Source: Setoptus koraiensis
Lineage: Eukaryota > Animalia > Arthropoda
Reading direction: 5' to 3'
NCBI GenBank assembly: GCA_048013815.1
Contig: CM106585.1
Coordinates: forward strand, 9,362,001 to 9,426,000
DNA length: 64,000 nt
Positions 697 to 41,737 of the stretch are shown piece by piece (position 1 is the first letter of the stretch; each line of letters opens with the position of its first letter). Below the pieces are notes generated by a model that saw nothing but the letters and a program-made list of their open reading frames with translations, did no database searches and was not told the DNA's origin. The translations under genes and the position numbers were made by a program.

Positions 697-1153
697 ATGA
701 TCATGTTGCCGACTGGCGGACAGTCGTTGCACGTGCAAGCGAGCTCGTGCACGATGACACTTTGGACAAGATTTCACAGTCACGCTGACCGTCATCAGCA
801 GCAAGTGGCAAGATCAAACGACGATAAAAGATTTGTATCAGTGTCAGTATCAGAGTGTTTGTATTTGTTGTGTGGCGCTGATAAAATCAAATCAATGTTT
901 TTGGTGTTTTTAATGATTGATATATTGTGGACGCGTTCGTTGTTTGTGAACGGTCAAATAATGCAGTCGCAACAATTATTGCAGCAATTTTATCACACGC
1001 CAGACACACCGGCAGCAACATCGGCAACAAATCATTTAATTCAGTACGACCAACACGTCAAATCGACGCCCCTCGGCGAGCCGGTATTCCGACTGGAGCC
1101 GCCAAATGTGATTAATTTCAGCAACGAAACGGGCGCCATCATTCCCTGTTTAG
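697..1153 (+). CDS. Dscam: Dscam exon 1: leader/signal peptide and first third of Ig1
   Basis: Hydrophobic MFLVFLMIDILWTRSLFVNG (ATG 895) followed by GEPVFRLEPPNVINFSNETGAIIPCL; phase-1 donor G|GTAGGT at 1154. The start codon (697 or 895) is uncertain. Confidence 0.85.
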
Positions 1154-2209
1154 GTAGGTCACTGTTGTTGAGCATCGTTGCAAATTACCGATTCTCCGGC
1201 AATCATTCTCGTTGATTCTCGTTGATTCTCGTTAAATTATCTCAATTAAATGCACTGAATATCAACTGACTGTCAGTATTCTAACTCGCTCTCACCGTGC
1301 CAATCTTGCTCACAAATTGCTCGAATTCGCCATGCGCCAATGTATTTTTATCCACTTGCACAATGAAGCTTCCGGTTCGCCCACGCCAAAATTAGTTTGG
1401 TATCAGGGCGTGGACAACGAACAGCGACAGCCAGTGACAAATATTAGCAACTTGCGTCTCATAACAAGCAACGCCATTAAATTGTTACCGTTTAAAGCCA
1501 GCCAATATCGCAGCGATGTTCATTCAACTAGTTACACATGTGAGGCAACCAATTCAATGGGCACCATCCAGAGCAGGCCCTCTATCGTGCAAGCGGGTAA
1601 GTACTATACTGGCGATATTTGATGCAACACAAGCTCGATATTATAGATAGACAGCATATATATATATAGCGGCAATACACATTGGCTTATGTATTATGGC
1701 TTACATTTGCAAGCAGCCCTTGTCATAACAACTAGATGTAATAATCATTGACTTGTGCCGACAGCGAGCTCAATGAATCCATCTAATTTCGAGTGGCGGT
1801 TAATTGAGAATGGGGCCCCGATGAGAAAACAATTACCAGTTGTCGCAGCTATTTCGGCGCGCGCTGCGATTCGTTTCACTGGTTTCATTGATTCGTCAGG
1901 GGAGCCCCCGGTTGCATTGCAACTTGGTGTGTGCGCCATATGCTCAAGTGTGTCGTGACAACAACATTAACAACAGCGCCACCAGTGACAACTAACAACA
2001 TTGGGTTAGAAAATCGGCAAACCCAAAATCGATTAGACGCCATGCCAGTGTATGTGTGCAATACACATAGAGTTTGTAGAGTGCGCCACAAAGCCAGGAC
2101 GGGTCGTTGTGCGACAAATTGATTAATTTTAATTCACTTCCATCTAACGATCTAACCAGCGCGCCACTATATCAATAGATATTACATAATACACTGACAC
2201 ATTGCAAGC

Positions 2210-14800: not shown

Positions 14801-17800
14801 GTGGACACTAATGACTGCTAATGAAACTTGAGCCTCCCAGACTTGCCAGTGGCGAGCCTGGCGGTACCGTTAGATAGTGGGCACATAAACAAAGAAACGA
14901 TTTATCACGTTATGTTACGTGTTGATCCCTTTGTTTGTGTCACTCCTCTAATTCCGCCGCCAATTCCGCGCACCTCGCGCGTTGGGCGACACTCGCACAA
15001 GCGGCCGGCTCCTGTAACCTGTGTTGCGACTCACCTGTCGCAAAACTCGCTCGCTGGCAAGACCATTTTGCATAGACATTTTGCACAGTTGAGCTCATTT
15101 GGGGCCAGCCGCGTGACAAGATGCTCATACACATTATCTGGCGCAAACTGGCACAAACTGGCCAATGTCCATTGATCAATGATGCCCGCCGCTGATGGTG
15201 CTGTGATGGCCGGCTTGGCGCCCACCATAGCGCGCCACCAACTGATCAGCTGATCTCACTTGGGGCCCCAGTGGATTGGGGGGCGCGTGAGTGAGCGGCG
15301 GATTGTGCTAGATGCTGCTGCTCAGTTGCATCATCCATCATTGGTGACTGGTTGGCGCGGGGGCGAGCCGGCACACACAGAGCGACAGTTAGTGACAGTG
15401 GCGCCGGACACGCGGTGGACAGTGTTTCAAATTGATAATATATATATATCAACTCATTTCCATTTGTTTGTGTGCACTTGTCTCTCGCTGCTCGCAATGT
15501 GCTCTTGGCTGTGTGTCGATTTGAGCGCCTCGGGCGCCCCAAAACCGGCCCACAGCCAAAAGCACATTGTGATGGAGCTCGAAGCTCGCAGCGACTATCA
15601 AGCGAGCGTTATTGATGATGGTCGTCGTGCCAATAATTTCCAGTCAGAGGCAACCGGTCACTCCAGTGAGACAGTGTCACGTAGCGGCCGCCACAAATGA
15701 TACAATCTCTCAAATTAAAACGTCTTCTCCTCACACGATGATGCCCGCGCTGACGATCACCCTTTCAGAGCCTCACCTGTGCCTTGTTTCACCTGTGCCG
15801 TGTTTCACCTGTATTTTGTTTCACCTGTATATACACAGTGTACACATATGCTTATGCGGTGCCAAACGGCTTGCATTTTATAGCAAAGGGCTGCTATCAA
15901 TATGCTGCTTAATGGAAAACTTCAAATGGATAAAAACACAGTGTTGCCACCACCAGTGTTTGACAACTGTTCCCATTCAGACGTCGATGATGTCAATATA
16001 TAAATTGTTTGCAATTTTGTATTCGGACAGCAGCGAAAATTCACTGAATATCGAGCAAAAATTTCGACGGACATCCGACAAATCTGATAAATCTGTTTGC
16101 ATCTCGTAACTTGTGATTCATAAGAAATCGGGCTTTTGGGTACAAATTTAGTTGCGCCCATAGATGAGCAAATTGATCGATAAATATTATGAATGACACG
16201 AAAGCGACCTACTAACACTTCATCTTGTTATCTCTTCCTTACTTGTCCCTAATTAACTGTCAATCGCAATCAATGCAATGCCAGTCATAGATCGGCCCAC
16301 CGAGGTTAAAGTGAACGACGAGTTTGTTTCATACGGGTCCAACGCGGTATTCAAATGTCGCATGAGCTCGCAAGCGGAATACGTCAATCTATTGGAATGG
16401 TTCACAAGCGATGGCCTGATAATTAAGGCACAAACAAGCAAAGGTAAGTTGCTGACATTCAACTTGAGTGATTCACGTCTATGTATGAATGAAAGTTCAT
16501 TCATATACAAATGTGAAATATGACAAATTATATATTAAATCAAATTTATATGCAAGTTACGCAATAGTTGAGGCACAAGTCGCGATGCAACTAGCACTCA
16601 TGTATGTCAATCTGTTTTAATCATCATTAGGCTTATTACTGTTGTTCTGTCGGTAATGGCGCCACCGCAACACGCTCGCTCAGCTGATTGAGCGTGATGA
16701 CGCAACGTTGTATCAATTCATCGACAATGTTGTTGTCGTCGTCGTTGTTGTTGTCGCCGTCGCTGTTGTCGTTGTTGTTGTTGCTCTGTTGTTGTTTCGT
16801 TGTCAAGACACACAAAGAGTTAATATGCAGGCACAATGCCAATTGCCCATCATGCTGCCATGAAGGGCATGTCTACTGAAGCGTTTAAGTAGTATGCATA
16901 TGTAACTTTGTTTATTGTTGACCACTGGTCAAGTGAGGCCAATCGAACGGCCATGAACGAATTAGAATTTGGCGCACGAGTGAACAGTGCGCACAAGACA
17001 AGTGGCCAAAGTTAGCTGACCGTTAGCTGACCATTGGCCAATAACGGATAACGGTTAACGGGATAATTCAATCGAGTGTCGACACGAGCAACGTGTGAGC
17101 GATGTTGCATAACTCATCATCATCGCTGCCAGGCAACAACGATAATAATTCTTTACCACTGCATCAATAAAACTGTATATTGTTACATCTATGTTTGACG
17201 TTTGTATTATGTAATATAATTATATTCATGGTGGCCCATGAGCCATCTAACGCATGATTGAATTTGCATATTGTTGTTGACAGATTGGCTAGCGCTTGCT
17301 GGCACCACCAATACATGCGAGTGAAATCTCGCGCCCACATGGGAGACAATCTCCCATGTTGTCCCATTGGTGTGTTGTATTTTCTCATATTTGTGCTGTT
17401 ATTCGGCCAGTGTGTTGCACAATAACAATGCGCAACAATAATACGTTTATTACGCAATATTACATAATACATAATAATATTGCGTAATACACATTGCCCG
17501 TTATGGCAAGCCGTTTCAGGCATTAGCGTTGAGCGTTGGCATAACGGCGACGAAAGAATTGCGTCAATTGCGCGTGTGTGTGTGTGTGTGTGTGTGGTCA
17601 AGTTTGATTATGATTGATGGCCGGCTAACACGTATTGGCGCGTATCATCAATTGTTGTGGCGCGTGCAAACAGTTGAGACAGTCAGGCGGTTTCAAACAT
17701 TGACAAACATTTGCAAAGTGTCAGAAAATGTTTGCAAACCGTCCGACTGCAACACTGCAAGCCAGCGCTGCCGACAACAGGTTCGAGCGCGTGCACTTTA

Positions 17801-26800: not shown

Positions 26801-29800
26801 CCTGTGGCAAGGCAGTGAAATGTCGCACTCGTGTGACAACCATTGACGAGCACAGCTGATCGAAGCCGCTGTCAAACTCACCTGATTGCCTGGCCGACCC
26901 GGTCTGTCACAGTGTGCAGCAAATAAAGTGACGCAACTCTTTCTTATGATAACTCTCCGACAAAATTATTGTATTAAAATCATTACATCTGTATATCCGT
27001 TTATTTGCAGGCAAATTCACCGCCTTCAACACCGGCGAGCTCCATATAAACCAAGTGGATTGGGCCGACTATCAGCGCAGCTACGGATGTCGCGTGCAAA
27101 ACAGCGTCACGTCGCTCGTTTCGTCCAGCTCGAACATGGCCCAGCTGATCATGACAGGTATTTATTTGTGTCCACGTTGTTTGTTTATTCTCTGCCAAAA
27201 AATAAACAATAAAAACAACAAAAGAATCTTTGCAGCTTCGAGCTTGCACCATTGGCCAGTTGGCCAGTTGGCCAGTTGGCCAGTTGGCGATCCATTGATA
27301 TTGTGCTCTGACACTAACACTCACATATTATTATTATGTTATATTGTGACATTACAATTTTTGGTCATTTCCTTTGTCATTCATCCATCTCATCGCTCCA
27401 GATTCCGCCATCTCGATCAACCAAGATCAACTGGCCAACATGTCGCACCAAAGTGTCGCCAACAATCTGGCCTCTCAGGTGCCTGTGAGGCCCGTGACGG
27501 GCCCAACAGCGCCGCGCGTTGTCCACAGCCAGAACCTGGTCATTGGTCTCGATTACAGGTACTATCAAGCTCAGCAGCACGACAATTGGGATCATCAGTA
27601 TCGTGATACTGGCGCCATCTACGCAACAAGCTACCACCAAAGTCAGCATTATCATCAGCCACAACAGCAGCAGCAGCAGTTGCATCCCTTTCAACAGCAA
27701 CAACAACAGCAACAGGCCACTCGTGCCCCAGCAAATGCGTTGCACAACAACGCACCCGATATACTCAAATCGCGCGTCATTATACCCTGTCTAGGTCAGG
27801 CATATCCGGCCCCAATATACAGGTGGCTATATCAGGCCAACAAATACTCCAAGGCCGTGCCGTTGGGCGAAATACAGCCCACAAATACGGGCCAAGACAA
27901 CCAACAGCACAACAGCAGCAGCAGCACGCCTCAGACCGCCACTAGTCCGCCGCCGGCTGCCGCCTCAAACCGTCCCGCGGCCGCCGGCCCCACCTCTCAG
28001 CTGGTTGTGCCCTCAAATGTTGTGGCAAACAGATTCTACAGGGCACCTAACCAGTGGCCCGTCACCCGGATGACGCTGGGCCCGGGTCTGTTAATGATTG
28101 ACTACCCCACTGTGCACGAAAGTGGGCGCTACCTATGTGAGATAAGCAATTCTGAGGGTACTACCCGTTGTGATATGCAAGTTATAATTAGGCAACCGAT
28201 AAAATTGTCAATAGAGATGAGCCATCAATATGGGCAATTGTCTTATTTAAATCAGCGCCACTTGGCAACCAATGACAAGCGCACATCGCAAGAACAAGAT
28301 GCAGACAACTTGAACGAAGTGATTGTCAATAATCAACAATTGGGCGATTATCAAGTGGCCAGCTCGCCGCTAGTGAACGAGCCGCCTGGGCCAACAATTT
28401 ATCAGAGATTTATTGGCGCTTTTAGACGAGCGTTTAGTTTTGTTTCCCAACCGGAAGTTGAAGAGAAGCCGCAGCAGCAGCAGCAGCGGCGGCGCGACAA
28501 GAGACAATTGTGGCGCCAAAATAAACTGTCCTATCACGACAAACTGACCGCTGGCTGGTTGGGCAACCAGTTGGCCGGTGACAGCAAGCCGGGCCGGATA
28601 AGCGTGCGGGCCAAATCACTGATAGAGCACGTGGCCATGGCCAGTGTCGGTCAGCGGCTCGAGCTCAATTGTAGCGGCTCTGGCAACCCCATAGACAATG
28701 TGCGCTGGTATAAGAACGGTCAGCTGATAAATGTCATTGGCCTGGCACAAATGGACATTGTCAATTTAGTCGGTTCGGACAGTTACTATTCTGGCATGCA
28801 AATGATGCAAAATGACAACACCAACAACGACAACGCGTCGTCGTGGACACCGACCACGGCCACCGGTCAGCGCCTGTTGAGCACGCTCATAGTGAAACAG
28901 ATACAACCCATAGACATCGGCCTATCCATATATGAATGTTTCGCCTACAACTCGCACGGCGACTCCCGGCGCGTCTCCTTTCCGCTGTTTGTGCTGGGTA
29001 GGTGCCCCCGTTGATTAGATGAGATTCGTGCGTAATTTGATGTATTGCGTATCATTGTCGCTTTATTGTCGCACAAAACTAACTTTCATATTCCGTTTTC
29101 CATTGTCTCCCCACAAATATCCACACATATCCACAAATATCCACAAATATCCACAAATATCCACAAATATCCACAAATATCCGCACACATCCGCGCACGT
29201 CCGCCGCAACGTGGATATCCGTCGCATCGGCGTATGGATATCCGTCGCATCGGCGCGTTGATATCCGTCGCATATGTGAATGTCCACTGCGCATGTGACT
29301 ATGTCGCTGCGCGCCAACGACCGCCCCGGTATGTGAATATCCGGTGAATACTGTACGCGAATAATGGCGACACCAGACTCGGCGCTTCTCATGGAGCTTC
29401 AGACAGCCAAAGAGCGAGACCCTTCCGCCGGCAAGCAGCAACCGGATGGCGCCGGCCAGGAGCAGCAAGTGCAATTGAACAGCTTCGATCAAAATTTCAA
29501 CTTGGACCAAACGATTCAATTTCAGGCCTCGGATCCCATGCTGGCCAATCAAAAGCCTGCCGTAATGGGCGCCCTGTCCAGAGTGAATCCCCTGAAGAAC
29601 GCGTACGTTGTTTTGGGCGACGACATTGAGCTGGTGTGCCCAATAGACGGGCAATTGCTCAACGGGAGCCTGTCACAGCAGCAGCGGTATGCAGAGGGCG
29701 CCTCAAACGACGACGACGACGACGATTGGTATTTAAAAAGCGGCCCCAGAGGCAAGCCCAAGAAAGCGGCCGGCGCAAATTGGGGCCACAGCAACGGCAA

Positions 29801-32800
29801 GCAGCTGCAGCAAATGCAGCGCCAGCAACAACAACTGCGCAACAGCATGGCAATATCCTGGCGCAAGAGTAAGTGGCCAAGTGGTTGCGTAACGGCACCG
29901 CCGGTTACCATCGGGCCGGACATACATGATTGAGTGATGCTCTCCGTTCTTCCTGTTTCTCGGTGCGCCCGTCTGCCGGGCCGGCCGGCCGTCCGTCCGC
30001 TGGTCCGCTGTCGGTGTGGCGCACGGACAAAACATCGGCAAGCGCACCGACGGCGGCAAGATTGATGCGCCGTCGAGACGCTGCCGGGCCGGGGCCCACC
30101 AAACTTAATGCCATTCAATATCGCTGCGTCCGAGTGGCGGCGGCACAGCCGCGGGATCCGGTCGCCAGTCGATCCGGCTGCCAATAATGAATGGCGAGCG
30201 AACGGAGCGGAGCGGATTGCAAATAAGCCAATCGCGCAGTCGACTTGATTTCGTGGGGCCCAATTGACTCTTAAACGACCGAATATAAATACAAGGACGG
30301 AATATAAATACACACACACACGGTCTAAATATGATCTACTGAATCTCTAATGATGCAATGCGCTCCATCTTGGGTGTGCGTGTGCGTGGCTCGCAAACAC
30401 GCACACGCACACTTTAGAGCGGGGCGACTTTATATTATTAGTGCAGCACAATATCATATATATATACCAGATATATCAGATATACGATACGTTTATATAT
30501 GGTGCATATGTGATATTACGAGCACATAGCGACGTTGTCATCAATTATTGTGTCCGTCTTGCATGCGCCACTCGGGGCCCCCCAACACCTACGACACACA
30601 CAGCCCCTGACTGCACAGCCGTGCAACACCCGCGCCAAGTTGCTCCGATCGCCCGCGACACCCGTTACGCCATTGGCATATCCGCCAGGCGGGCCCCAAC
30701 TTCGCTTAGCCGGTTTATCCACTAATAGGATAAATCGGTCGTTATATACGGCGAGCACACTAGATATTGTGGCCAGAAATGGTCGCCCTCAATTAATGCT
30801 CGCTGGGGCCGGCTCTGGTTTGGGGCCCCGTTCTGGTCTGGGGCCCCAGCGCGTGCTGGCAACATGATCGGAAGACATGATAAAATGCATTGTTTGGGGC
30901 TGTAATATAACTGTAATATTTATGCGCACAGTTTACAATTATACAACTTGTCTTGCGGTCTCATGTCGCGAGAGGTCGTAAAGCGGCAAACTTTGCAAGC
31001 TGGCCCCACCGACTGGCTATGCCGACAAGGGATATTGTGCGGCAGTGAGACAAGCGCCGGCGACTAGCGAATAGCTCGCTAGTCGCCGGCGCCAATAACC
31101 AGACCCGTGGATAACCGGTTCACCTGTGAATATTCACGGCAGTGGCGCCTCCGTGAGATTGTCGCAACTGACACTTGGCCGCCGGCAGAGGGAGCAAAGT
31201 GGCAAGCGCGAGAGTGAGCCCACAACAAATTTTATTCACAATTTTCGTCGCAACTTTAGTCGCAATTTTTGTCAGACAGTAACACTAATTGGGGCTAATT
31301 TTGCGCGACGACATGTCACACAAACAGCCCACCAAGAGCCCCGATGTGACTTTGCAATCTTGTTGCGCCATCTCGAGACATCGTTTGTATCTCGATAAGT
31401 CGTTTGCGGCTCGGGCCACCGTTTGCGGCCCGACCGGCCAGCGTGGCGAGACTTGGGGCTCGGCGGCCGAAACGAGAGTTCAGCGGCCGAAACGAGAGCC
31501 CAGCGGGCAAGTAGACTCACAACAACTCACTTGCGTGCCTCTGCCGCTTCTAGGCGAATTTGTGAACAAGTGAGGCCAAGTGGCGCGAGTGGGGCCCGGC
31601 TCGAGCGATCTGAGTGATATAACGAGAGCGCGTTGCGATATTGCCGGCAGCCAGATCGGGCACTTTGGCCAAGTCGATTTGGCGACTTTTGAGCAGGGGC
31701 GCAAAAGTCGAGGCGCACGCGGGCAAACTGGCGCCCGTTGGTACGTGTTTGGGCGCGCGAAACTTGGCAAGCCTCGGTGTGCCTGCCCAAAGGGGCCCAG
31801 CAAATGATAATAATCATAATGTAATCATTAGAGGCGATTATAATGAACACACACACTGCCGGCCGGCTCGCTCGCCGGCGGGCTGGCCAGTATTGACATA
31901 GCCAGCGTCTTGCCATATGATTGTTATTTTGATAACTGTTGTTAGCTGACACTAATCGAATTCTTTTCTCGCCCACATTTCTCGCCAACTATCTCGCTTC
32001 TACCCCCGCAACCACCGACAACCACCGGCAACCACCGGCAACCACCGACAACAACACCGACAACCACCGACAACAACACCGACGGCACTACCGCCAACAA
32101 CAACATCAACAACAACAACCAACCAACCGACAACAACAACGACAACCAACCAACCAACATCAACAACCAAACAACCGACGCCGACAACTACGCCGACCGC
32201 GACACGCTTATGTTGGGCCGTTGCAGCGGTGGCACAACAAAGGCAATTGTTGTTATTGCCCAGCAATAGCCGTCAGTTGATAAATGAATCTAATGGCACA
32301 TTAATTATTAGAGATGTTAGTAATAGATACGATCAAGGCAATTATGATTGTACATGGACTATGAAAAAGCCAGCCAGCAACAACAACAACAACAACGCCA
32401 GCGCCGCCAACAACTACATGCCCAACACAAGCCGAGACACCAACAACAAGCCAGACAACTCGCCAGTGGCGCCCACATTCAGCGCCAACAACAACGGCCC
32501 CACAACAACGGCCCCCCAGTCCGGCAGCAATAGTGACGATTCCGGCAAGCTCGCCGCGCCTCATCAATCATCATCAGCGCTGCCTGGTGGCGGGTATCTC
32601 GAGCAGGAGGACGGCTCCTCTTCCTCAATCAGCATCAACATCATGGGTTCGTAGCGCTACTACTTCATTACTGCCACTGGGCAAGCCCCCCCCTCCCCCC
32701 ATCTTGGCCATTCTCGGCCCAGTGGGTCCCTTGCCGGAGTCAGCCTGTCGTTTCGCTTACTTATGTTGTTATCCCGCCGGCGCCGGCCAAACTCACTCGC

Positions 32801-35800
32801 GATTCGTGAGCCAAACTCGCCCCTTGCGAGCCAAACAAGTGCGCACAATCACGCGCACTTGTTTGGCACATGTAGCATATTGTATCTGTGCACGCGTGTG
32901 CGGATATACGCCGCCGAGTATCGTTCGCGCGGGCCCCAATCGCGTTCGCCGGCCCCTCGCACAGTTTCCTGTGCTGGCTGCTCGGCGTTTGCTGCAGCAA
33001 TGGCGCTGCTCGCTGCGACGTTCGCTTGCCATTGTAACCGATTCCACTGGCTGGCTCGACGTCAGGCTGCCCGTTTGGGGCCCGGCGCCCCATTCTGTAA
33101 ACTTTTCAGCATTGTGCGCGCGGCGCGTTCATTAGGGCGCCGCCCGACGACGGGCACCGAGAGAACGTCGCTCAATCGCTCTGATGCGCCAAATATCCAG
33201 CGAATACCCTGCGACTATCCTGCCGAAGCCCAGCGAATATCCTGACAATGCCCGACCAATATCCAGCAAATATCCAGCAAATATCCGCTGCCGGCAGATC
33301 CAATCCACCGCAGCCAGTGGGGCAGCCAGTGATTGGGGCCCCCTGGCAGCACCAATCACCGTGCACCGGCGCAACATTGGTGCAGGGCGCCAGTGTGGTG
33401 CAAGGTGCCAGCGTGGTGCATGGTCGAATACCGTATCGCCAATGCGGTACAGCGTGCACCAGATTTCTGTGCACCAGATAGCGGCGGCATACCGCACGGT
33501 GCGGTGCTATATCTGTGCAGTGCGTATATCATGTAATGGTGCACTTGTGTCGGGCACGCACCGAGCCAGTCGTTGGGCCAAGACCGGCACAGTGCGACGG
33601 CTCGGGGAGCCCCAGCTCCAAGTTGCAGCCTGCAAGCTACGGCTGGCAAGTCGAGGAGACACAAGCGAGGCGCCCATCTCTTGCGAATGCGACGCTCGCG
33701 GGGGCCCCAAACATCATGATTCATTGTGTGTGTGTGTGTGCGACGACGAGGGGCCCACTGCAGCAGGCATTTAAAGTGGCCGACACTTGCCAGAATGCGC
33801 ACACAAAATCAGCTCAATCAAGTGGGCCGACATCAGCATGCATCACGATTGTCGGAGATGGGGGACTCGCGGCTGGCTGGCCGGCTGACTGGCTGATGGG
33901 CGAGGGGCGCGCAGCACGTAGCGGCATTAGATAGAGGCGCCCTAACGAGCCGGATCTGAGCCGTGGGCTGTGGGCCGAGCGAGTGCTCGTGAGCGAGCCT
34001 GTGTGAGCGAGCCTGTGTGGGCGAGCCTGTGTGAGCGAGGGGCCCAATTGCCCGGCGAGCGGATAATGAAAGCATGAATGAGAGCGCCGATATCCAATGG
34101 ACCAGTGGCGCCAGTTGACCCGCGCCCACGGGCCCCGCGCCAGCGATCGTCGGTGCAATAGTGGCGAAAAGGTGTGTGTGTTGTGCATCTAAAGTAGGCT
34201 ATTCATTTGGGCCCGTCGTCGCCACCAGCCAACAGAGCCCAAATGCCGAGAGGGCCCAAATGCCGAGAGAGCGAGCGGGAGACTCAATTGGCCGTTGGCT
34301 CGTGTGCCCTGCGAGCAACTTATCCGTTGTGTGTAAAGTTGTAAAGATTATCCTGTGCGTCGTTGTGCGCAAATTATCAGACCGTCGGCTCACCCGCGGC
34401 GACATGCTCGATCGTCGCCACTATTAATCGAATCCAAATATATCCCCGCCGACGCTTTATGCGCGATTTTCGCGGGCCCCCCTCGTCACGCGTGTGTGTA
34501 AATCTCACAATTGTCGGCCGGCCCGCGCTGTGGCTTCGTCGGGACACTGAGGCTCTCAGTGAGGTTCGCATTGGGGCGCTCACTGAGGCGCTCGTTGAGT
34601 TGTCAATGGGAGCGGTGCTCTCAATTGAGCCCTAATGTCAATGCGATTTCGCCGCACCCGATCCGCGGTTTGCCATAATTGTCCAATGGGGCCAATCAAA
34701 TCCAATGTCGGCTCGGCTGCAATTGACTGCTCACTGACTGACTGGCGCCGATTGATGGCCTAATTGGTGCAATCGTTTCACTGGGCCCGCCGTCATTTGG
34801 CACAAGCGTTGGCAATGATTGCGCAATTGGCCACAATGATACCCAAATGATACACTGCGCACAGAAGCCATTTAAATACCCGGCCATTGGAGGGGGGGGG
34901 GCAGTCAATTCTTTTTAGGCCGCTTTTGTGCCATCAATTCAATATTTATATTCCAATTTAATATCCCCAATAACATACAAACATAAGCGCACATACATGC
35001 GATCATTGATCAAACAACAACTTTTGCCCTTACTATTTTCTCCATTGTATGGTTGTTATATTAAAATTATTATATTTAGTGGGCCCCAAAATCGATCCCT
35101 TCGACTTCAGCAAGAGCCTCGAGGATGGAATGCGCGCGGTGGCCGTTTGCGCGGTTATTTCCGGCGACTCGCCCATCGATATCAAGTAAGTATTGAGTTG
35201 GGTTATGTCGCTTTATGTAGTACGTTATGTAGTCTGTTTTATGTAGTGTACGCAATGCAGTATGTTGTATGGCAGGGTGTTATGTAATGGCAGTATTATA
35301 AACATTTCTCTCCATTGTGTTTGCTGTTGTTGTTGTTGTTGTTGTTGTTGTCACCTATGATTATTATCTCATGCGCGCGCCTCTCTCTCTCTCACTCTCC
35401 CACTGTATGTTAGCTGGTTCAAAGATGGCCAATTGCTGATAGCCGATAATGAGAATGTCACCATCGACATGTCCAACGGTTTTGTGTCCACGCTAACATT
35501 CCATAGGATCCATCCAGCTCACACCGGACAATACACTTGGTGAGTTACATAACAATAATGGCCGAGCGGGGGCATAATAATAATAATAACATTGCTTCAA
35601 TAACGGCCACCCAGCCACTAGCTACTAGCTAGTAGCTAGCCATATATAGCTCATGCCGGCGACACAGTTGGCAAGCTCACACTGAAAATAAAAGCCGCCC
35701 TCTTCCGCCATCCACCTGATCTAACCGAAATAAATCTCTTCTGACACCTGTCGTCGAAACAACCCACTTTTTCCGGTTTTTTGTTGTTCACTGGTGCGCC

Positions 35801-37457
35801 AACAGTGTCGCCTCGAACAGTTTTGCCACGGCCAACTATTCCTCGAGCATGATTGTCAACGGTGAGTGATAATAATTTATTTTCATCCATCCATTGATCT
35901 GTCCATTGATCTGTCCATTGATCTATCCATTGATCTATGTGTTGTTTATTGTGTGTCATGTTGTGCTAATAATTGAATTTTTCCCACTATCGCTGTTGTC
36001 GTTGTTAGTGGCGCCCTATTTCATCGAGGCCCCCAAAGACACGCAGGTCATTCTGGGCCGCGACGTCTTGGTGAACTGCGAGGCCGGCGGTCAGCCAATG
36101 TGAGTAGCCGCAAATGTGCAAAATGGGCACACGAGAATTAAGAAAGAAACGAAATTCACCAAATTTTCCGCTTCTCCTCAGTCTCGCCGGCGAGAATTCG
36201 GGTGCAAAACTGAAATTTTTTGACTGGAAAACTTTTCTGAAAATTTTTTCTCCATTTTCCTCTCTTAAATTTTTCCCCTTTTTTCTCTCTCAATTTTTTT
36301 TCTTTTTGCCCGAAAAAAATAAAAAAATAAAAAATTTCTCAAAAACTTTTCCCGCGCCCCAATCAGAGCCCAGATCAGGTGGAAGAAACAGGTGAGCCTC
36401 GGGGGAATCAACGCGCCTGGCCCCACCAAGGCAGGCATGGACGGAATTCAGGAGGGCAGCTCGCTCGGGCAACAAGAGGGCGCCCATTTGTTGGAGGGCG
36501 GCCCAGTGGATATGGCAACCAGTGCGGAGAAGCATCTGCGCCACTCGCATCGATCCTCGTCGGCCTATCATCATCAGGAATTCAAGACAATCACCTCTAA
36601 TCCGCACATACAAATTCTGGAGAACGGCTCCATGGTTATAAGAGACGCCGAATTGTCCGACTCGGCAAAATACATGTGCCAGGCCTTCAATGGCATCAAT
36701 CCGAGCCTGAGCTCCATTATCCAGTTGGACGTTCTCAGTCCGCCCCAGTTTGACGTTAAATTTGAGACTGTCAGCGTGAAGAAGGGCGCCTCCATCAGGT
36801 TTGCCTGTGCGCCTCGAGGTGACCCACCAATAAACCTGGAATGGAAAAAAGACGGCCGCAGCCTGGCGCGTTCGCCAACTTCCGGTCAATCAGCCATCCT
36901 TTCAATGTCAAGTCAAGAGGCGAGTCAAGTTGGCTCGTCAAGTGATATAACGAGCGTTGTTGCGTCTGCATCAAAGTATCACATATTGCAGCGCAATCAA
37001 ACAAACAACAACAACAACTACCTGTATGCCAGTGGTAATGCCACTAGCTCGATTGTGGCGCCATCTATTCTTGGCTCAAATGGCATGGGCCTAGGCAGCG
37101 AGCTAATAATAGAATTTGTCGATAGAGCCGACTCGTCATTGTTCACCTGTTATGCGCACAATTCAATAGGTCAAGACGAGTTAACCTATAGGCTGATTGT
37201 GCAAGAATTGCCCGATGCACCTATCAACATTAGAGTGGCCAGTGTGACATCGAGCAGTATTAAGTTGTCGTGGCAACAACCGTTCGACGGTAACTCGCCC
37301 ATAAATCAATACATAATTGAATATAGGCAAGCCTCATTTAATGGGGCCGACACTGGCCAAGAGGCGGCGCTGGCCATGTTCAGTGCGGCCGCTTCCGGTG
37401 TCGTCGGGTCTCAGCATCAAAAGCACAGCCACAGCCGTTACCATCGCAACAAGAGCG

Positions 37458-37495
<38 letters not shown>

Positions 37496-40400
37496 AACAA
37501 CAATAACCTGTTCGGCGGTGCAGACAACAACCAAGAGTCGGCTGTCGCCAGCGAATGGGTGCGCATCAACGTGCCGAATCGTGCCGGCCAACAACCGCAG
37601 CAACAACAACAAACTATTTTGCCACATTTGGATCAGCTGCAACAAAAACTGTCAAAGTCGCCAACAGCGGCCACCACAACAACCATGAACTTGGACGACG
37701 CCAATCATCTGTCCGTGATTCTGCGCAACCTGAAAGCCAAAACAACATATCACATCCGGCTGGCCTCGGTGAATTCAATCGACCAGGGCGATTTCAGTCC
37801 GCAGCTGACGGTCACAACCGCCGAGGAGGCGCCCTCTTACAGGCCCGCCGAGGTGAAGGCGCAACCGATCTCGTCCAGTTCCATCAAAGTTGTTTGGCGC
37901 GGTCCGCTGGTGCCCGACTACAGTGCCCCAATTAAGGGCTATTACGTTGGCTACAGGAAGTATGTGTCGGGCGGCGTGGGCGTGGGCGATCTAGCCATCG
38001 CTCATCAGCTGCGGCCCGGCCCAGATGAGCTGGCCGCGCCCGGTGCCGGGTCCGGTGCCGGTGTAAGCGCAACTTTGCCCCAAATCATGCCGCCATCAAC
38101 GGCAGCCGCAGCCGCAACAGCAACCGCAACAACGGCGCCCATGAACGGCAACAACTCAAATGTGTCCGGCAACAACATTATCGATCAAGATCAACAGCAG
38201 CTGCACAACGGCGGGCCCCAGCGCCAATCTGTGGGCACAATATCCAATGACAACAAATTAGCATTTGCCACCGTGGAGAGCCAACAACAACAGCAACAGC
38301 CGCCCACCGTCAGCGGCAACAACCTTCAACAGCAACAACAGCAACAACAACAGTTGCAATCTGGCCTCTTTCACGAGTATGTGATTAACAATTTGGACAA
38401 AAACACCAAATATGAGATCAAGGTGCAGGCTTTCAATTCGGCCGGCACAGGGCCCTCTAGCGAGACATTCGGGCAGACGATGAAATTTGACCGGCCCGGC
38501 CAGCCCCAATTGAAGGTTCTAAACACCAGACATAACTCTATTGAGATAAGGTGGACGATCAGCGACCAAAATCCGGTTGCAGGTGAGTTATCGCTCAACT
38601 GACGGGACAATTAACGGTTTCGAGTTTCCGCCGCTAGCCGCTAGCAACGATCTCGGCACGTTTGTTGGTGCATTTGCATCGTCGCAACACGCTCTGGCAG
38701 CTGGCTATTTCAAGCGACTAACTGCAACAATCAGCTCGTGTGGTGTCGTAATAGCTCGTTAGCTTAGTGGGCCATATTGTGTGTAATTATGGCAGCAACG
38801 GGGGATAAAAATATTCGGATATTCCTGTCACATGACTCATGTGACATGAGAGCCATCCGAAAGTCGTATGAAACATATGGCAATTACGCACTCTGATAAT
38901 CAGAGTCTGATTCACTGATCGGCATGATTATCTAATTTGCTCGCGCAATGCATAATAACTCTTTGTATTTATATTTTGATTTTGATTATCGCACGCGCGC
39001 AGGTTATTCCATATTTTACAAGTGCGAATACGACGACTGGCAAGAGATTCAGCTGACGCTCATAAACTCTTACATAATTGACAATCTCAGATGCGGAAAC
39101 AAATACCAGATCTATTTGTCTGCGTTCAACACCGCCGGCCGCAGCGACCCGTCCGACGTGCTGCTCGTCAGGACCGATGGCACAGGTAAGCTCTTTGAAA
39201 TTGCATTTGATTTTTGATTTTTAAATTTTGATTCGGTTGATGCAAACAATATTGCAAATATCGTATCCACGCGTGAATCAGTGCCCGCTCACTAATCAGT
39301 GTCATGTTGATCATAATGAATTCTTTGCGACTTGTCAGTTCCCGTGGCGCCCGACAAGAACGACTTCATCAAGGCAAACATCACCGAAGTGCTGATTGAT
39401 TTGAGCCAGTGGAAATCGGGCGGCTGCCCAATAAGCAATTTTATGTTGCAATACAAGAAAATGGCCGACGCAAACTGGTTTGTACTGTCGGACAATGTGG
39501 CATTTGCAGCCAGCGACACCATAACAGTACCTGAATTGATGCCCGCAACTTGGTACAAGATATTGATCACGGCCACCAATGAGGCCGGCTCAACAAATAC
39601 CGAATACATGTTTGCCACACTCACCAAGTCAGGCGCACAATTGGCGCCACTGATTTTGCCCAATGGGGCCGATCCATCCAATAAAGATTATGCCGCCCAG
39701 TCGGGCCTCAACGGCAATCAGAATGGGCACGCCATGGGCGCCATTGGCGCACTGTTGCATTGGATGACAAGCGATTTGAATGTGTTCGTGCCAATCGGTG
39801 GCATACTTGTGATTATCCTAATTCTGTCCATATTGTTATATGTTTACGGCTTGAGTCAGGATGGTACAAACAAAAATGGGCCCACTTGCAATGGCACAAA
39901 TAAAACCACAACCACAACAACAACAACAACAACGGCCGCTGGCACCGGTGCCAATGACAATGCCTACAATGGTTGCTTGAGCAACGCGGGCACCATGATC
40001 AATGGGCAGCATCAATGTGATAATATGTTTGTCGGGCATCAGCACAATGTTGTTGTTGACAACAACAACAATTTGGATAACCAGTTGATATTGCAGCAAG
40101 AGAAAGCGGCGACCGGCGCACACAATCAGGCCAATTATCACACTAATTTGCATCTTATGAGATCGGGCCTATTCAATGCAAATCAGCACAACACCGGAGC
40201 CGGTTCATCGTCGCTCAGCACGCACTCTACGGCCTGTCCAGAGGGCTCCATATCGACGGGCTCCAGCTTGGGTCTGGCCACAGCCATCAATCAAAATCAA
40301 AAGGTTATTTTGGCCACCATGAGGGCGCCCATTGGTCACTACAACACCAATCAGATGGGCAACGATTTAGATCAGGACGACACCAACATGAACAATGCAG

Positions 40401-41737
40401 GCGACAAAATGCTCACCAGCCAGCTACCCAATTTGCACGACCAATATGGCATTTATAATTTGTACGATCAAGGCGACCAGCATATGGATCCACAGCAGCA
40501 TTATCATCAAAACGCCAATACCTATGCGGATATTATGAGCACAATGAACACAAGCGCCAGACAACAACAACATGTTAATATAATACCGTCCACTAACAAC
40601 AACAACAGCAACAACTTTTGCTCGCCCAAAATCGATACGCTGACCGCCGGCAAGGATATCGCCAACCATTTGATGTTGTACAGCAATTCAATTCAGCAAC
40701 AAGACGACCAAAACGCCCAAATACAAACAAACGGCACCATTCTAAAGAGCAATCTCATTTACAGTATGAGAGGCTCGCGCGACGAAATAATCGACGACAA
40801 TTACGACAACAAGCAAACGTTCATGGACAACGGTAACATGGAGGGCAATTTTGTAAACAACGAGCCAACAGCAACGGCTTGCATAGTGTCCAAGAGGAAA
40901 TATACTGATCAGTTTTACAGCAATCAAACCCAGCAGCAACAACAACAGCAACAACCAAATTACAACGGCAACACAATTGCCTATCATCACCACCAATTCA
41001 GCAACAACTCGCAAGCTTGTGACGGGCCCATTTATCAAAAGTTGCAACTGTTGTCGCATGCCAGCGATCAATCTAGCCCAATAATAAATAAGGCACAAAC
41101 ATTGCACAGGACATCTCAGCATCAGCAGCAGCAGCAGCATCAGTATCATCAATCTGGCATTGGCATTCCGAGTTCGTTGTCGTCGGGCAACATTAATTCA
41201 AATAATTTATTTATCTCCAACGAGCAAGCGTCAAATTTGATATCCGTCAACGACACCAATAAGGCACACAAAGGCGCCACCATCGAGTCGGCCACAATGA
41301 CACGCCAATTCGGCACAACAAACTCCTCTGGTCACTACGACGTACCTGTGCTGCCCCTGTCCGACCTGACAAGTCCAACAATGACAACAAACGGCGACCA
41401 CAAACAACAACAGCAACAACAGCTCATCCATGGCGCTGGTCAGCCGTTCTTAATGAACAAACAAGGCGACTATAATAACAGTAACAATGGCTATTCGCGA
41501 ATTAAAAGATTCTCCATAAACGATGGCCAGCTGACAGCAAACCAGCGAACTAATCACACCGGCCAAAACAATCATATCATGCTCCTCACCAACAACAACA
41601 ACAACAACAACAAAAATCATCAAATGTTTAGTCAGGACCAGCAGCAAGCCAATTATGCGATGCTCGCCAAAGCGACTACTCAAATGAATTGTGATAAATC
41701 CCTGATAGAGAACGGCGCGACAAATGATTCAGTGTAA
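697..41737 (+). CDS. Dscam: Dscam-family cell adhesion receptor, chelicerate mDscam type: Ig1-4, Ig6-9, FN3 1,2,5,6, TM, long cytoplasmic tail; 14 exons, about 2,891 aa from ATG 697 (2,825 aa from ATG 895)
   Basis: Exons joined by hand: 697-1153, 1369-1596, 16285-16443, 27011-27157, 27402-28997, 29377-29868, 32227-32646, 35080-35185, 35414-35539, 35806-35861, 36009-36099, 36367-38582, 39003-39185, 39339-41737. All introns GT..AG, phases consistent, total 8676 nt (multiple of 3). Dscam signature motifs: PVFRLEPPNVINFSNETGAIIPC (Ig1), GELHI..V...D...SYGCR (Ig2), GPKIDPF (Ig7), NLRCGNKYQIY (FN5), WKSGGCPI and PATWY (FN6). Confidence 0.95.
1369..1596 (+). CDS. Dscam: Dscam exon 2: remainder of Ig1
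   Basis: ASGSPTPKLVWYQ...LLPFKASQYRSDVHSTSYTCEATNSMGTIQSRPSIVQA; acceptor AAG at 1366-1368, donor GTAAGT at 1597; 228 nt, phase 1-1. Confidence 0.93.
2213..2242. repeat. (CA)n microsatellite
   Basis: About 15 CA units; a second tract lies at about 2811-2840. Confidence 0.95.
9081..9143. repeat. 9-bp minisatellite (AACTGAGAT) x7
   Basis: aactgagat aactgagct aactgagac aaccgagat aactgagat aactgcgat aactgagag. Confidence 0.95.
9815..9878. repeat. 16-bp tandem repeat x4
   Basis: aactggatact(a/g)t(c/t)aa, four copies. Confidence 0.95.
10806..10855. repeat. 10-bp tandem repeat (CCC[G/A]AAGAGC) about x5
   Basis: Read directly; a related AAAGAGCC array lies at about 3828-3868. Confidence 0.9.
13643..13700. 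repeat. 10-bp tandem repeat (AAGCTGA[C/T]AC) about x6
   Basis: Read directly. Confidence 0.95.
14704..14800. repeat. Degenerate 9-bp minisatellite (GGCCCAGTT-like) about x11
   Basis: ggcccagtt ggcccagtt tgctcagcg ggcccagtt ggctctgtc ggctcggtt ggccaagtg tgccgagcg ggccgagcg... Confidence 0.85.
15771..15830. repeat. 16-bp tandem repeat carrying four CACCTG E-boxes
   Basis: CACCTG at 15774, 15790, 15806 and 15822. Confidence 0.9.
16285..16443 (+). CDS. Dscam: Dscam exon 3: N-terminal half of Ig2 (position of the insect exon-4 cluster)
   Basis: VIDRPTEVKVNDEFVSYGSNAVFKCRMSSQAEYVNLLEWFTSDG; CAG acceptor, GTAAGT donor at 16444; 159 nt, phase 1-1. Confidence 0.92.
19653..19716. repeat. 18-bp tandem repeat x3.5
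   Basis: atctcgcccgtttggggt units. Confidence 0.9.
23722..23760. repeat. Perfect 19-bp inverted repeat with 1-nt spacer
   Basis: cggcgcgagtatgatacgc-c-gcgtatcatactcgcgccg. Confidence 0.97.
27011..27157 (+). CDS. Dscam: Dscam exon 4: C-terminal half of Ig2
   Basis: GKFTAFNTGELHINQVDWADYQRSYGCRVQNSVTSLVSSSSNMAQLIMT; TTTGCAG acceptor, GTATTT donor; 147 nt, phase 1-1. Confidence 0.93.
27402..28997 (+). CDS. Dscam: Dscam exon 5: Ig3 and Ig4 with large low-complexity insertions
   Basis: IIPCLGQAYPAPIYRW...GLLMIDYPTVHESGRYLCEISNSEG (Ig3); LELNCSGSGNPIDNVRWYKNG...IYECFAYN (Ig4); 1596 nt open, phase 1-1, donor GTAGGT at 28998. Confidence 0.92.
29111..29275. repeat. 10-bp tandem repeat (CCACAAATAT) x8 followed by an approximately 23-bp repeat x2.5 in Dscam intron 5
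   Basis: Read directly; second unit ggatatccgtcgcatcggcg. Confidence 0.92.
29377..29868 (+). CDS. Dscam: Dscam exon 6: Cys-free linker (in place of Ig5) and N-terminal half of Ig6
   Basis: DSALLMELQ... linker, then GALSRVNPLKNAYVVLGDDIELVCPIDG...AISWRK; CAG acceptor at 29374-29376, donor A|GTAAGT at 29869; 492 nt. Confidence 0.85.
31995..32200. repeat. C/A-rich (CAA/CCA) low-complexity tract at the 3' end of Dscam intron 6
   Basis: caaccaccgacaa / caacaa degenerate repeats; out of frame with exon 7. Confidence 0.85.
32227..32646 (+). CDS. Dscam: Dscam exon 7: C-terminal half of Ig6
   Basis: LPSNSRQLINESNGTLIIRDVSNRYDQGNYDCTW...SISINIM; TTGCAG acceptor, G|GTTCGT donor at 32647; 420 nt, phase 1-1. 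Confidence 0.85.
35080..35185 (+). CDS. Dscam: Dscam exon 8: Ig7 part 1
   Basis: VGPKIDPFDFSKSLEDGMRAVAVCAVISGDSPIDI; TTTAG acceptor, phase-2 GTAAGT donor at 35186. Confidence 0.93.
35414..35539 (+). CDS. Dscam: Dscam exon 9: Ig7 part 2
   Basis: NWFKDGQLLIADNENVTIDMSNGFVSTLTFHRIHPAHTGQYTC; phase 2-2, GTGAGT donor at 35540. Confidence 0.93.
35806..35861 (+). CDS. Dscam: Dscam exon 10: Ig7 part 3 (56 nt)
   Basis: (C)VASNSFATANYSSSMIVN completes the F-strand Cys and the G strand; CAG acceptor, GTGAGT donor at 35862; phase 2 to 1. Confidence 0.9.
35890..35937. repeat. 12-bp tandem repeat (TCCATTGATCT[G/A]) x4 in Dscam intron 10
   Basis: Read directly. Confidence 0.95.
36009..36099 (+). CDS. 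Dscam: Dscam exon 11: Ig8 part 1
   Basis: VAPYFIEAPKDTQVILGRDVLVNCEAGGQP; TTAG acceptor, phase-2 GTGAGT donor at 36100. Confidence 0.93.
36367..38582 (+). CDS. Dscam: Dscam exon 12: rest of Ig8, Ig9, FN3-1, FN3-2 and start of FN3-5
   Basis: IAQIRWKK...ILENGSMVIRDAELSDSAKYMCQAFNGI (Ig8); PPQF...FACAPRGDPPINLEWKK...DSSLFTCYAHN (Ig9); PDAP...DGNSPI...FS (FN1); EEAPS...YEIKVQAFNSAGTGP (FN2); RPGQPQLKV (FN5). Donor GTGAGT at 38583. Confidence 0.93.
39003..39185 (+). CDS. Dscam: Dscam exon 13: remainder of FN3-5
   Basis: GYSIFYKCEYDDWQEIQLTLINSYIIDNLRCGNKYQIYLSAFNTAGRSDPSDVLLVRTDGT; phase 1-1. Confidence 0.93.
39339..41737 (+). CDS. Dscam: Dscam exon 14: FN3-6, transmembrane helix (about 39782-39852) and N/Q-rich cytoplasmic tail
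   Basis: VPVAPDK...LSQWKSGGCPISNF...PATWYKILITATNEAG; TM VFVPIGGILVIILILSILLYVYGL; ends NDSV then TAA at 41735-41737. Confidence 0.93.

What the first reader, a model, noticed from the sequence alone, without database searches (positions are those of the whole stretch)
28991..29650. Dscam that appears to have lost Ig5 in addition to the mDscam deletion (8 Ig + 4 FN3)
Seen: Ig4 ends at ...FPLFVLG. The next exon starts GDSALL..., like the opening of Ig5, but runs about 65 aa with no Cys or Trp and then enters GALSRVNPLKNAYVVLGDDIELVCPIDG. That stretch and the later LPSNSRQ...NGTLIIRDV...DQGNYDC match Ig6. The 379-bp intron 5 has no room for an Ig exon. FN2 also joins directly to FN5. Established: loss of FN3-3/4 and Ig10 defines chelicerate mDscams, and in insect Dscam1 the Ig5-Ig6 turn forms the S-shape that positions Ig7 for homophilic pairing. 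Inference: removing Ig5 would change dimer geometry, giving a possibly undescribed Dscam architecture.
Basis: partly seen in the sequence, partly recalled or inferred. Interest (0 to 1): 0.75.

Follow-up and report, generated by a model that had tools for sequence, protein, structure and literature searches.

The report
Mite Dscam gene without Ig5
A nerve-cell adhesion gene (Dscam family) of a tiny mite and its close relatives has replaced its fifth immunoglobulin domain, part of the rigid elbow in the fly protein, with a short floppy linker, yet selection still keeps the gene intact.

Summary
The window holds a complete 14-exon Dscam gene on the + strand (895-41737), and every splice phase is consistent. 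HMMs built for each Ig position find Ig1, 2, 3, 4, 6, 7, 8 and 9. There are four FN3 domains (FN1, FN2, FN5, FN6), a membrane span and a tail.

Ig5 is found nowhere in the 64 kb. In its place, exon 6 opens with 65 residues that have no Cys or Trp, are rich in Q, D and N, and match no Ig model.

This is not an assembly fault. A relative's contig (L016) encodes Ig2b, Ig3, Ig4, a 54-residue linker and the start of Ig6 in one open frame. A third species (P0004) keeps the same exon, the same splice sites and a 77-residue linker.

The loss is specific to this lineage. The sister sequence from Dinothrombium, a tick ortholog and a paralog in the same genome all keep a strong Ig5.

The gene is under purifying selection: dN/dS is 0.027 on domain blocks.

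It clusters inside the chelicerate mDscam group. None of about 80 representative Dscams scanned has Ig4 next to Ig6, and the papers I searched describe no such form.

I file it as a new variant of a known kind. The effect on binding geometry is inferred, not tested.

The parts
895..1153 (+). Exon 1: start Met, signal-peptide-like MFLVFLMIDILW.., first half of Ig1
   Evidence: Ig1 HMM 17.5 bits; donor TTTAG|GTAGGT; Met position
1369..1596 (+). Exon 2: second half of Ig1
   Evidence: Ig1 HMM 66.3 bits, next best Ig3 25.5; Pfam I-set
16285..16443 (+). Exon 3: first half of Ig2
   Evidence: Ig2 HMM 35.9 bits, profile positions 6-58; splice sites
27011..27157 (+). Exon 4: second half of Ig2 (..SYGCRVQN..)
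   Evidence: Ig2 HMM 37.3 bits, profile positions 54-103; 62% identical to L016
27402..28997 (+). Exon 5: Ig3 and Ig4, with low-complexity inserts; ends ..FPLFVL
   Evidence: Ig3 and Ig4 HMM hits; Dscam1 3DMK Ig3 and Ig4 alignments; Pfam Ig_3 43 bits
28998..29376 (+). Intron 5, 379 bp, mostly tandem repeats; holds no coding potential for an Ig domain
   Evidence: TRF arrays at 29111-29273; no Ig HMM hit in any frame
29377..29571 (+). Linker in place of Ig5: 65 residues, no Cys or Trp, 62% Q/S/P/E/K/G/D/N
   Evidence: no PDB, Ig-HMM or Pfam match; composition; modelled as coil, low confidence
29572..29868 (+). Rest of exon 6: first half of Ig6 (B strand ..IELVCP.., a loop insert of about 60 residues, C strand ..ISWRK)
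   Evidence: Conserved in P0004 and L016; weak Ig6 HMM hit of 7 bits; donor GTAAGT
32227..32646 (+). Exon 7: second half of Ig6 plus an N-rich insert
   Evidence: Ig6 HMM 29.1 bits, E 1.8e-7; blastp hits at the Ig6 position of canonical Dscams
35080..35185 (+). Exon 8: Ig7, first part
   Evidence: Ig7 HMM 37.4 bits; 76% identical to Dinothrombium
35414..35539 (+). Exon 9: Ig7, middle part
   Evidence: Ig7 HMM 37.0 bits
35806..35861 (+). Exon 10: Ig7, last part (split Cys codon TG|T, then VASNSF..)
   Evidence: Read from the sequence; phases fit
36009..36099 (+). Exon 11: first half of Ig8
   Evidence: Ig8 HMM 21.8 bits
36367..38582 (+). Exon 12: rest of Ig8, Ig9, FN1, FN2, start of FN5 equivalent
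   Evidence: Pfam fn3 95.9 bits, I-set 63 bits; Ig8 50.6 and Ig9 36.6 bits; ortholog P0001 74% identical
39003..39185 (+). Exon 13: rest of FN5 equivalent
   Evidence: Pfam fn3; hits just before the last FN3 in canonical Dscams
39339..41737 (+). Exon 14: last FN3 (FN6 equivalent), membrane span, long N/Q-rich cytoplasmic tail, stop
   Evidence: PF25059 FN3_DSCAM-DSCAML_C 100.4 bits, cut-off 39

Best explanation
This is a working ortholog of a chelicerate mDscam, a neuronal Ig-superfamily adhesion receptor that lacks Ig10 and FNIII3-4. In one mite lineage its Ig5 domain was lost and replaced by a non-Ig, low-complexity and probably disordered linker of 54-77 residues. The Ig1-4 head, Ig6-9, four FN3 domains, the membrane span and the tail are all kept. 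Shown: the domain content, its conservation in at least three species, the presence of Ig5 in outgroups and in a paralog, and purifying selection. Inferred: the protein still acts as a cell-surface recognition receptor. Also inferred: the Ig1-4 head is tethered flexibly to the Ig6-9/FN3 stalk, instead of through the rigid Ig5-Ig6 elbow that in fly Dscam1 shapes the S and places Ig7 for pairing.
For: Dscam identity: PF25059 at 100.4 bits.

Domain content: position-specific HMMs built from 30 canonical Dscams find Ig1-4 and Ig6-9 and no Ig5 on either strand of the window. All 14 exons join in consistent phases.

Controls: Ig5 scores 122.6 bits in Dinothrombium and 101.9 bits in own-genome paralog 2.

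Orthologs: L016 has Ig2b-Ig3-Ig4-linker-Ig6a in one ORF, and its best match in this genome is this gene. The P0004 contigs keep the acceptor CAG|ACTCG, the donor and the Cys/Trp-free stretch.

Phylogeny: the window groups with 8 orthologs (99), is sister to Dinothrombium (97), and lies inside the clade with mDscam architecture (96).

Selection: dN/dS is 0.027 at dS 0.79 against L001.

Linker: no match in Pfam or PDB.
Against: There is no transcript evidence for the exon 5/6 junction; the model rests on splice consensus, phase and orthologs. Both AlphaFold runs had low confidence (pLDDT 33.7 and 48.0), so disorder of the linker is suggested but not shown. The first half of Ig6 scores only weakly on the Ig6 HMM (7 bits). 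Binding behaviour is untested. Only three species show the Ig4-to-Ig6 region directly.
Confidence: 0.85

Rival explanations
1. The linker is a very diverged Ig5 that still folds as a small, disulfide-free beta sandwich, so the domain count is really nine.
For: The first residues (DSxLLxxLQTA) and the last (..AVMG) sit where the Ig5 A strand and the end of its G strand (..VNVYG) lie in relatives. Window and P0004 share these motifs.
Against: It has 54-77 residues against 100 for Ig5. Its length and sequence vary between species, and L016 shares almost none of it. It has no Cys pair or core Trp and only 18-23% hydrophobic residues. There is no Ig5 HMM hit even at E 10 and no Pfam hit. AF2 drew it as coil or helix, never as strands, though at low confidence.
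Confidence: 0.06
2. It is an assembly or annotation artefact: an Ig5 exon exists but is missing from the assembly, or is used in an alternative transcript encoded elsewhere.
For: Intron 5 is repeat-rich, the kind of place where assemblies collapse. No RNA data were available.
Against: L016, an independent assembly of another species, has no intron there and no Ig5. Two independent metagenome contigs show the same exon start. No Ig5-like ORF of 15 residues or more was found anywhere in 64 kb on either strand, while half-domains of the other Ig positions were detected.
Confidence: 0.03
3. The gene is a decaying paralog on its way to being a pseudogene, and the Ig5 loss is one symptom of that decay.
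For: Nearly every domain carries long low-complexity inserts. The sequence is far from its paralogs.
Against: All frames are open, including exons of 2.2-2.4 kb. All eight Ig domains keep their Cys pair. Splice sites are conserved across species. dN/dS is 0.027 on domain blocks. Nine orthologs form one clade.
Confidence: 0.04

Closest known systems
Chelicerate mDscam (Cao et al. 2018, BMC Genomics 19:66, PMC5775551)
   Same: It lacks Ig10 and FNIII3-4. It has four FN3 domains and the Dscam C-terminal FN3, a membrane span and a tail. It falls inside the clade of proteins with mDscam architecture. The nearest named sequences are Dinothrombium tinctorium RWS17057.1, Haemaphysalis longicornis XP_077560085.1 and Limulus XP_022239116.1.
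   Different: mDscams are described with nine N-terminal Ig domains. This one has eight, with Ig5 replaced by a non-Ig linker. It also carries long low-complexity inserts in domain loops.
Drosophila Dscam1 ectodomain (Ig1-8 structure 3DMK; S-shaped homodimer, PMC4928987)
   Same: The order of Ig positions is collinear. Exon 5 aligns to Ig3 and Ig4 of 3DMK. Ig2, Ig3 and Ig7, the domains that pair in Dscam1, are all present.
   Different: There are no alternative exon clusters, no Ig5, no Ig10 and no FN3-4. Without Ig5 the rigid Ig5-Ig6 elbow of the S shape cannot exist as such.
Chelicerate sDscam (shortened Dscam; PMC4835542, PMC10154414)
   Same: It is another case of Dscam shortening by loss of whole domains in chelicerates.
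   Different: sDscams lack Ig1-6, Ig10 and FNIII3-4 and 6, and use 5' cassette arrays. This gene keeps Ig1-4 and Ig6 and has lost a single internal domain.

Membership tests
Dscam family | Dscam/DSCAML-type C-terminal FN3 domain (PF25059) | tested here: met
   100.4 bits against a cut-off of 39, E 7e-29, covering the full profile
Dscam family | N-terminal Ig array collinear with Dscam Ig positions, followed by FN3 domains, one membrane span and a cytoplasmic tail | tested here: met
   Position-specific HMMs give the order 1,2,3,4,6,7,8,9. Pfam fn3 is found. The hydrophobic span ..IGGILVIILILSILLYVYGL.. is read in exon 14.
mDscam (chelicerate, PMC5775551) | Lacks Ig10 and FNIII3-4 of classical Dscam | tested here: met
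   FN2 is followed directly by the domain that aligns just before the last FN3 of canonical Dscams. No Ig lies between the FN3 domains.
mDscam (chelicerate, PMC5775551) | Keeps the nine N-terminal Ig domains (Ig1-9) | tested here: not met
   Ig5 is absent and replaced by 65 non-Ig residues. The orthologs show the same.
mDscam (chelicerate, PMC5775551) | Groups with mDscams in a tree of the C-terminal part of the ectodomain | tested here: met
   It lies in a clade (SH-aLRT 96) in which 24 of the 25 rows other than the window and its 8 orthologs have mDscam architecture. It is sister to the Dinothrombium sequence (97) (quick search, exon 12 only).
Classical Dscam (LDscam) | 10 Ig + 6 FN3 | tested here: not met
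   8 Ig + 4 FN3
sDscam | Lacks Ig1-6; N-terminal variable cassettes | tested here: not met
   Ig1-4 and Ig6 are present. No tandem cassette array was seen in the window.

The most novel reading that the evidence does not exclude
This mite clade carries a natural Dscam in which the rigid Ig5-Ig6 elbow is replaced by a floppy tether. The Ig1-4 horseshoe would then bind independently of Ig7. That would mean the double-S geometry is not needed for Dscam-type recognition when no isoform matching is required, and it would make this a new binding mode for the family.
Probability: 0.3. Interest if true: 0.6.

Novelty: new variant of a known kind. Interest (0 to 1): 0.45.

Why it matters
Dscam receptors are a textbook case of how a chain of Ig domains sets the geometry of self-recognition between neurons. 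Deleting a single internal domain is normally something done at the bench. Here evolution has removed Ig5 and kept the result under strong selection in several species. This gives a ready-made test of whether the elbow between the Ig1-4 head and Ig7 is needed for binding. It also adds a step to the known series of Dscam shortenings in chelicerates (classical, mDscam, sDscam), and it occurs in a miniaturised mite with a very small genome.

Tried and rejected
- The word-index protein search with exon 5 found nothing, probably because low-complexity words swamped the candidates.
- Exon 6 has no paralogous match in its own genome.
- A PDB sequence search with exon 6 gave only a chance hit.
- Both AlphaFold jobs were of low confidence. 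L016 Ig4-linker-Ig6a as a single sequence gave pLDDT 33.7, and even the Ig4 control was not confident. Exon 6 with two orthologs gave pLDDT 48. I use them only as weak hints.
- I looked for synteny with the downstream Cys-knot and PX genes of L016 in the window and found none.
- I first took DSAISINQ.. at the start of exon 5 for a degenerate second half of Ig2. The Ig2 HMM then showed the true Ig2b exon at 27011-27157 in another frame, so I dropped that reading.
- Other Logan contigs (L017, L019, L022-L024, L001) stop short of the Ig4-Ig6 region.
- I considered that Ig4 or Ig6 was the lost domain. I rejected this on the HMM ranks, the ..YECF.. end typical of Ig4, and the CP and LP..RQ..NGTL marks typical of Ig6.
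Everything was done exon by exon by reference.

Full report
**What is there.** The window (G000:C1:9362001-9426000) carries a complete Dscam-family gene on the + strand. I rebuilt it exon by exon from open frames, splice consensus and phase. The 14 exons are:

| Exon | Coordinates | Content |
|---|---|---|
| 1 | 895-1153 | Signal peptide, first half of Ig1 |
| 2 | 1369-1596 | Second half of Ig1 |
| 3 | 16285-16443 | First half of Ig2 |
| 4 | 27011-27157 | Second half of Ig2 |
| 5 | 27402-28997 | Ig3 and Ig4 |
| 6 | 29377-29868 | Linker, first half of Ig6 |
| 7 | 32227-32646 | Second half of Ig6 |
| 8 | 35080-35185 | Ig7, first part |
| 9 | 35414-35539 | Ig7, middle part |
| 10 | 35806-35861 | Ig7, last part |
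| 11 | 36009-36099 | First half of Ig8 |
| 12 | 36367-38582 | Rest of Ig8, Ig9, FN1, FN2, start of FN5 equivalent |
| 13 | 39003-39185 | Rest of FN5 equivalent |
| 14 | 39339-41737 | FN6 equivalent, membrane span, tail, stop |

Every junction has a GT donor and an AG acceptor, and all phases fit. Split codons give sensible residues, for example TG|T for the second Cys of Ig7. Pfam identifies the last FN3 as the Dscam/DSCAML C-terminal domain (PF25059, 100.4 bits against a cut-off of 39), together with fn3 and I-set domains. All such steps were run on single exons by reference.

**Checking the observation.**
- Ig4 ends ..FPLFVL at 28997.
- Intron 5 is exactly 379 bp. Arrays of 10-bp and 23-bp tandem repeats at 29111-29273 fill much of it.
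- Exon 6 begins at 29377. The split codon gives D, followed by SALLMELQTA... There are 65 residues up to ..AVMG, with no Cys and no Trp; 62% of them are Q, S, P, E, K, G, D or N and 23% are hydrophobic.
- The first half of an Ig domain follows (..YVVLGDDIELVCP.., a loop insert of about 60 residues, ..ISWRK). Exon 7 supplies LPSNSRQ..NGTLIIRDV..DQGNYDC.

**Which domain is missing.** I aligned 30 canonical Dscams taken from the representative search. I cut the alignment at the domain borders of a tick mDscam and built one HMM for each of Ig1 to Ig9.

The HMMs tell positions apart in controls. In the Dinothrombium protein each position is won by its own model; Ig5 scores 122.6 bits there against 47.4 for the runner-up.

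In the window the winning models run in the order Ig1, Ig2, Ig2, Ig3, Ig4, Ig6, Ig7, Ig7, Ig8, Ig8, Ig9. No open frame of 15 residues or more, on either strand of the whole 64 kb, is best explained by Ig5. Exon 6 gives only a weak Ig6 hit (7 bits), and its linker gives nothing even at E 10.

Pfam finds nothing in the linker of the window, of P0004 or of L016, and the PDB sequence search gives only a chance hit. Exon 5 aligns to Ig3 and Ig4 of the fly Dscam1 Ig1-8 structure 3DMK. The flanking domains also carry position-typical marks..YECF.. at the end of Ig4, and CP after the B-strand Cys plus LP..RQ..NGTL in Ig6. So the lost domain is Ig5, not a neighbour. All eight remaining Ig domains keep both Cys residues.

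**Not an artefact.** The word-index search with exon 6 found P0004 (42% identical), which lies on two independent metagenome contigs, L002 and L003. Aligned to the window, these contigs share three features:
- the acceptor (CAG|ACTCG);
- the donor after ..ISWRK;
- a 77-residue Q-rich stretch without Cys or Trp before the conserved ..ALSRVNPLKN.YV.LGDDIEL.CP.

The representative search with exon 12 found a close ortholog, P0001 (74-75% identity overall; 86-100% on the ungapped Ig7, Ig8, FN5 and FN6 blocks, 97% or more on all but the first half of Ig8 and FN6), and seven more distant ones on Logan contigs. One of these contigs, L016 (19.8 kb), reaches upstream. A single open frame, 3715-5442, encodes the second half of Ig2, Ig3, Ig4, a 54-residue non-Ig stretch and the first half of Ig6, with no intron at the position of intron 5. 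Searched back against this genome, that frame hits this gene best. Three species therefore share the Ig5-less layout, and in one of them there is no intron in which an exon could hide.

**Lineage and family.** A maximum-likelihood tree of the Ig9-FN2 part gives these groupings, with SH-aLRT support (exon 12 alone for the window, quick search):

| Grouping | Support |
|---|---|
| Window with P0001 | 95 |
| These two with the seven other Logan orthologs | 99 |
| That clade as sister to Dinothrombium tinctorium RWS17057.1 | 97 |
| All of these inside a clade in which 24 of the 25 other rows have mDscam architecture | 96 |

L016's protein, P0033, lies in the other subclade of the nine orthologs, so the loss most simply predates their split.

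Relatives outside that clade keep Ig5:
- Dinothrombium keeps a canonical Ig5.
- The tick sequence does too.
- Paralog 2 in the same genome (C2:18190987-18187535) does as well, at 101.9 bits.
- Further Dscam-like loci in the genome also match the Ig5 region.

mDscams are defined by the loss of Ig10 and FNIII3-4 (PMC5775551). The gene meets that test, because the domain after FN2 aligns just before the last FN3 of canonical Dscams. It fails the implied nine-Ig feature.

**Is the gene alive?** I compared seven ungapped domain blocks between the window and L001, summing counts per block without joining sequences. dS is 0.79, dN is 0.022 and dN/dS is 0.027. Frames are open throughout, and splice sites are conserved across species. 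This is strong purifying selection on the folded domains. The linker and the loop inserts evolve fast: L016 shares almost none of the linker.

**How it most likely works.**
- *Shown:* a membrane receptor with an Ig1-4 head, a linker of 54-77 residues depending on species, Ig6-9, four FN3 domains, a membrane span and a long tail.
- *Inferred from the fly Dscam1 structure:* Ig1-8 there forms an S-shaped molecule whose dimer pairs Ig2/Ig2, Ig3/Ig3 and Ig7/Ig7 (PMC4928987). That the Ig5-Ig6 turn shapes the S is my own knowledge of the 2008 Ig1-8 structure paper. Without Ig5, the head cannot be held rigidly relative to Ig7, so it is probably tethered flexibly. mDscams lack alternative exon clusters, so three-point isoform matching may not be needed, which would relax the constraint on the elbow.
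- *Weak structural hints:* the two structure predictions drew the linker as coil or helix, but at low confidence (pLDDT 33.7 and 48.0). Disorder is likely from composition and variability, but it is not demonstrated.

**Novelty.**
- The mDscam paper does not mention Ig5 or any eight-Ig form, and it sampled no acariform mites.
- Searches for Dscam together with eriophyoid, acariform or trombidiform terms found no description of Dscam architecture in these mites.
- I scanned the roughly 80 Dscams that carry the Dscam-type last FN3 among the best 150 representatives, using the position HMMs. Every one with both Ig4 and Ig6 has Ig5 between them. This is a sample, not a census.

I rate it a new variant of a known kind. 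It is real, conserved and undescribed in what I could search. However, domain loss is already a known theme in chelicerate Dscams, and the functional consequence is untested.

**Origin of the genome.** Earlier notes of the scan call it a mite. The sister position of Dinothrombium fits a trombidiform mite. The assembly size (48.76 Mb, two contigs) matches the published Polyphagotarsonemus latus assembly (49.1 Mb, two contigs; PMC11233664). This is an unverified guess.

Noticed in passing
G000:C1:3686285-3717203 (loci L006-L009): Another Dscam paralog seems to start with a signal-peptide exon followed directly by Ig7, Ig8, Ig9 and four FN3 domains, including a full PF25059 domain (106.6 bits). 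No Ig1-6 exon was detected in the 28 kb upstream, where unrelated genes lie. It resembles an sDscam but has the C-terminal FN3 that sDscams are said to lack.
   Followed up: partly
G000:C2:18182276-18213215, minus strand (loci L010-L013): Paralog 2 keeps a canonical Ig5 (101.9 bits) but carries an insert of about 300 residues inside Ig6. The position HMMs gave no clear Ig2 or Ig3. Its first exon lies 22 kb upstream.
   Followed up: partly
window 27402-41737: Long Q/N/S/T/D-rich inserts sit in loops of almost every extracellular domain, for example about 60 residues between the B and C strands of Ig6 and poly-N and poly-Q runs inside FN1 and FN2. They differ in length and sequence from the 74%-identical ortholog P0001, while the domain cores are mostly 94-100% identical (86% in the first half of Ig8).
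   Followed up: partly
L016:3715-5442 and 8748-12524: The ortholog in this relative lacks several introns that the window has (Ig2b/Ig3, Ig4/linker, FN5a/FN5b, FN5b/FN6). Either the relative lost introns or the window lineage gained them.
   Followed up: no
window 29111-29273: Intron 5 holds two adjacent tandem arrays: CCACAAATAT x7 and a 23-bp unit x2.7.
   Followed up: no
protein P0152 (representative library): One chelicerate-type mDscam representative reads Ig1-2-5-6-7-8-9 with the position HMMs. It may have lost Ig3-4, or it may be an incomplete gene model.
   Followed up: no
Identity not verified.
   Followed up: partly
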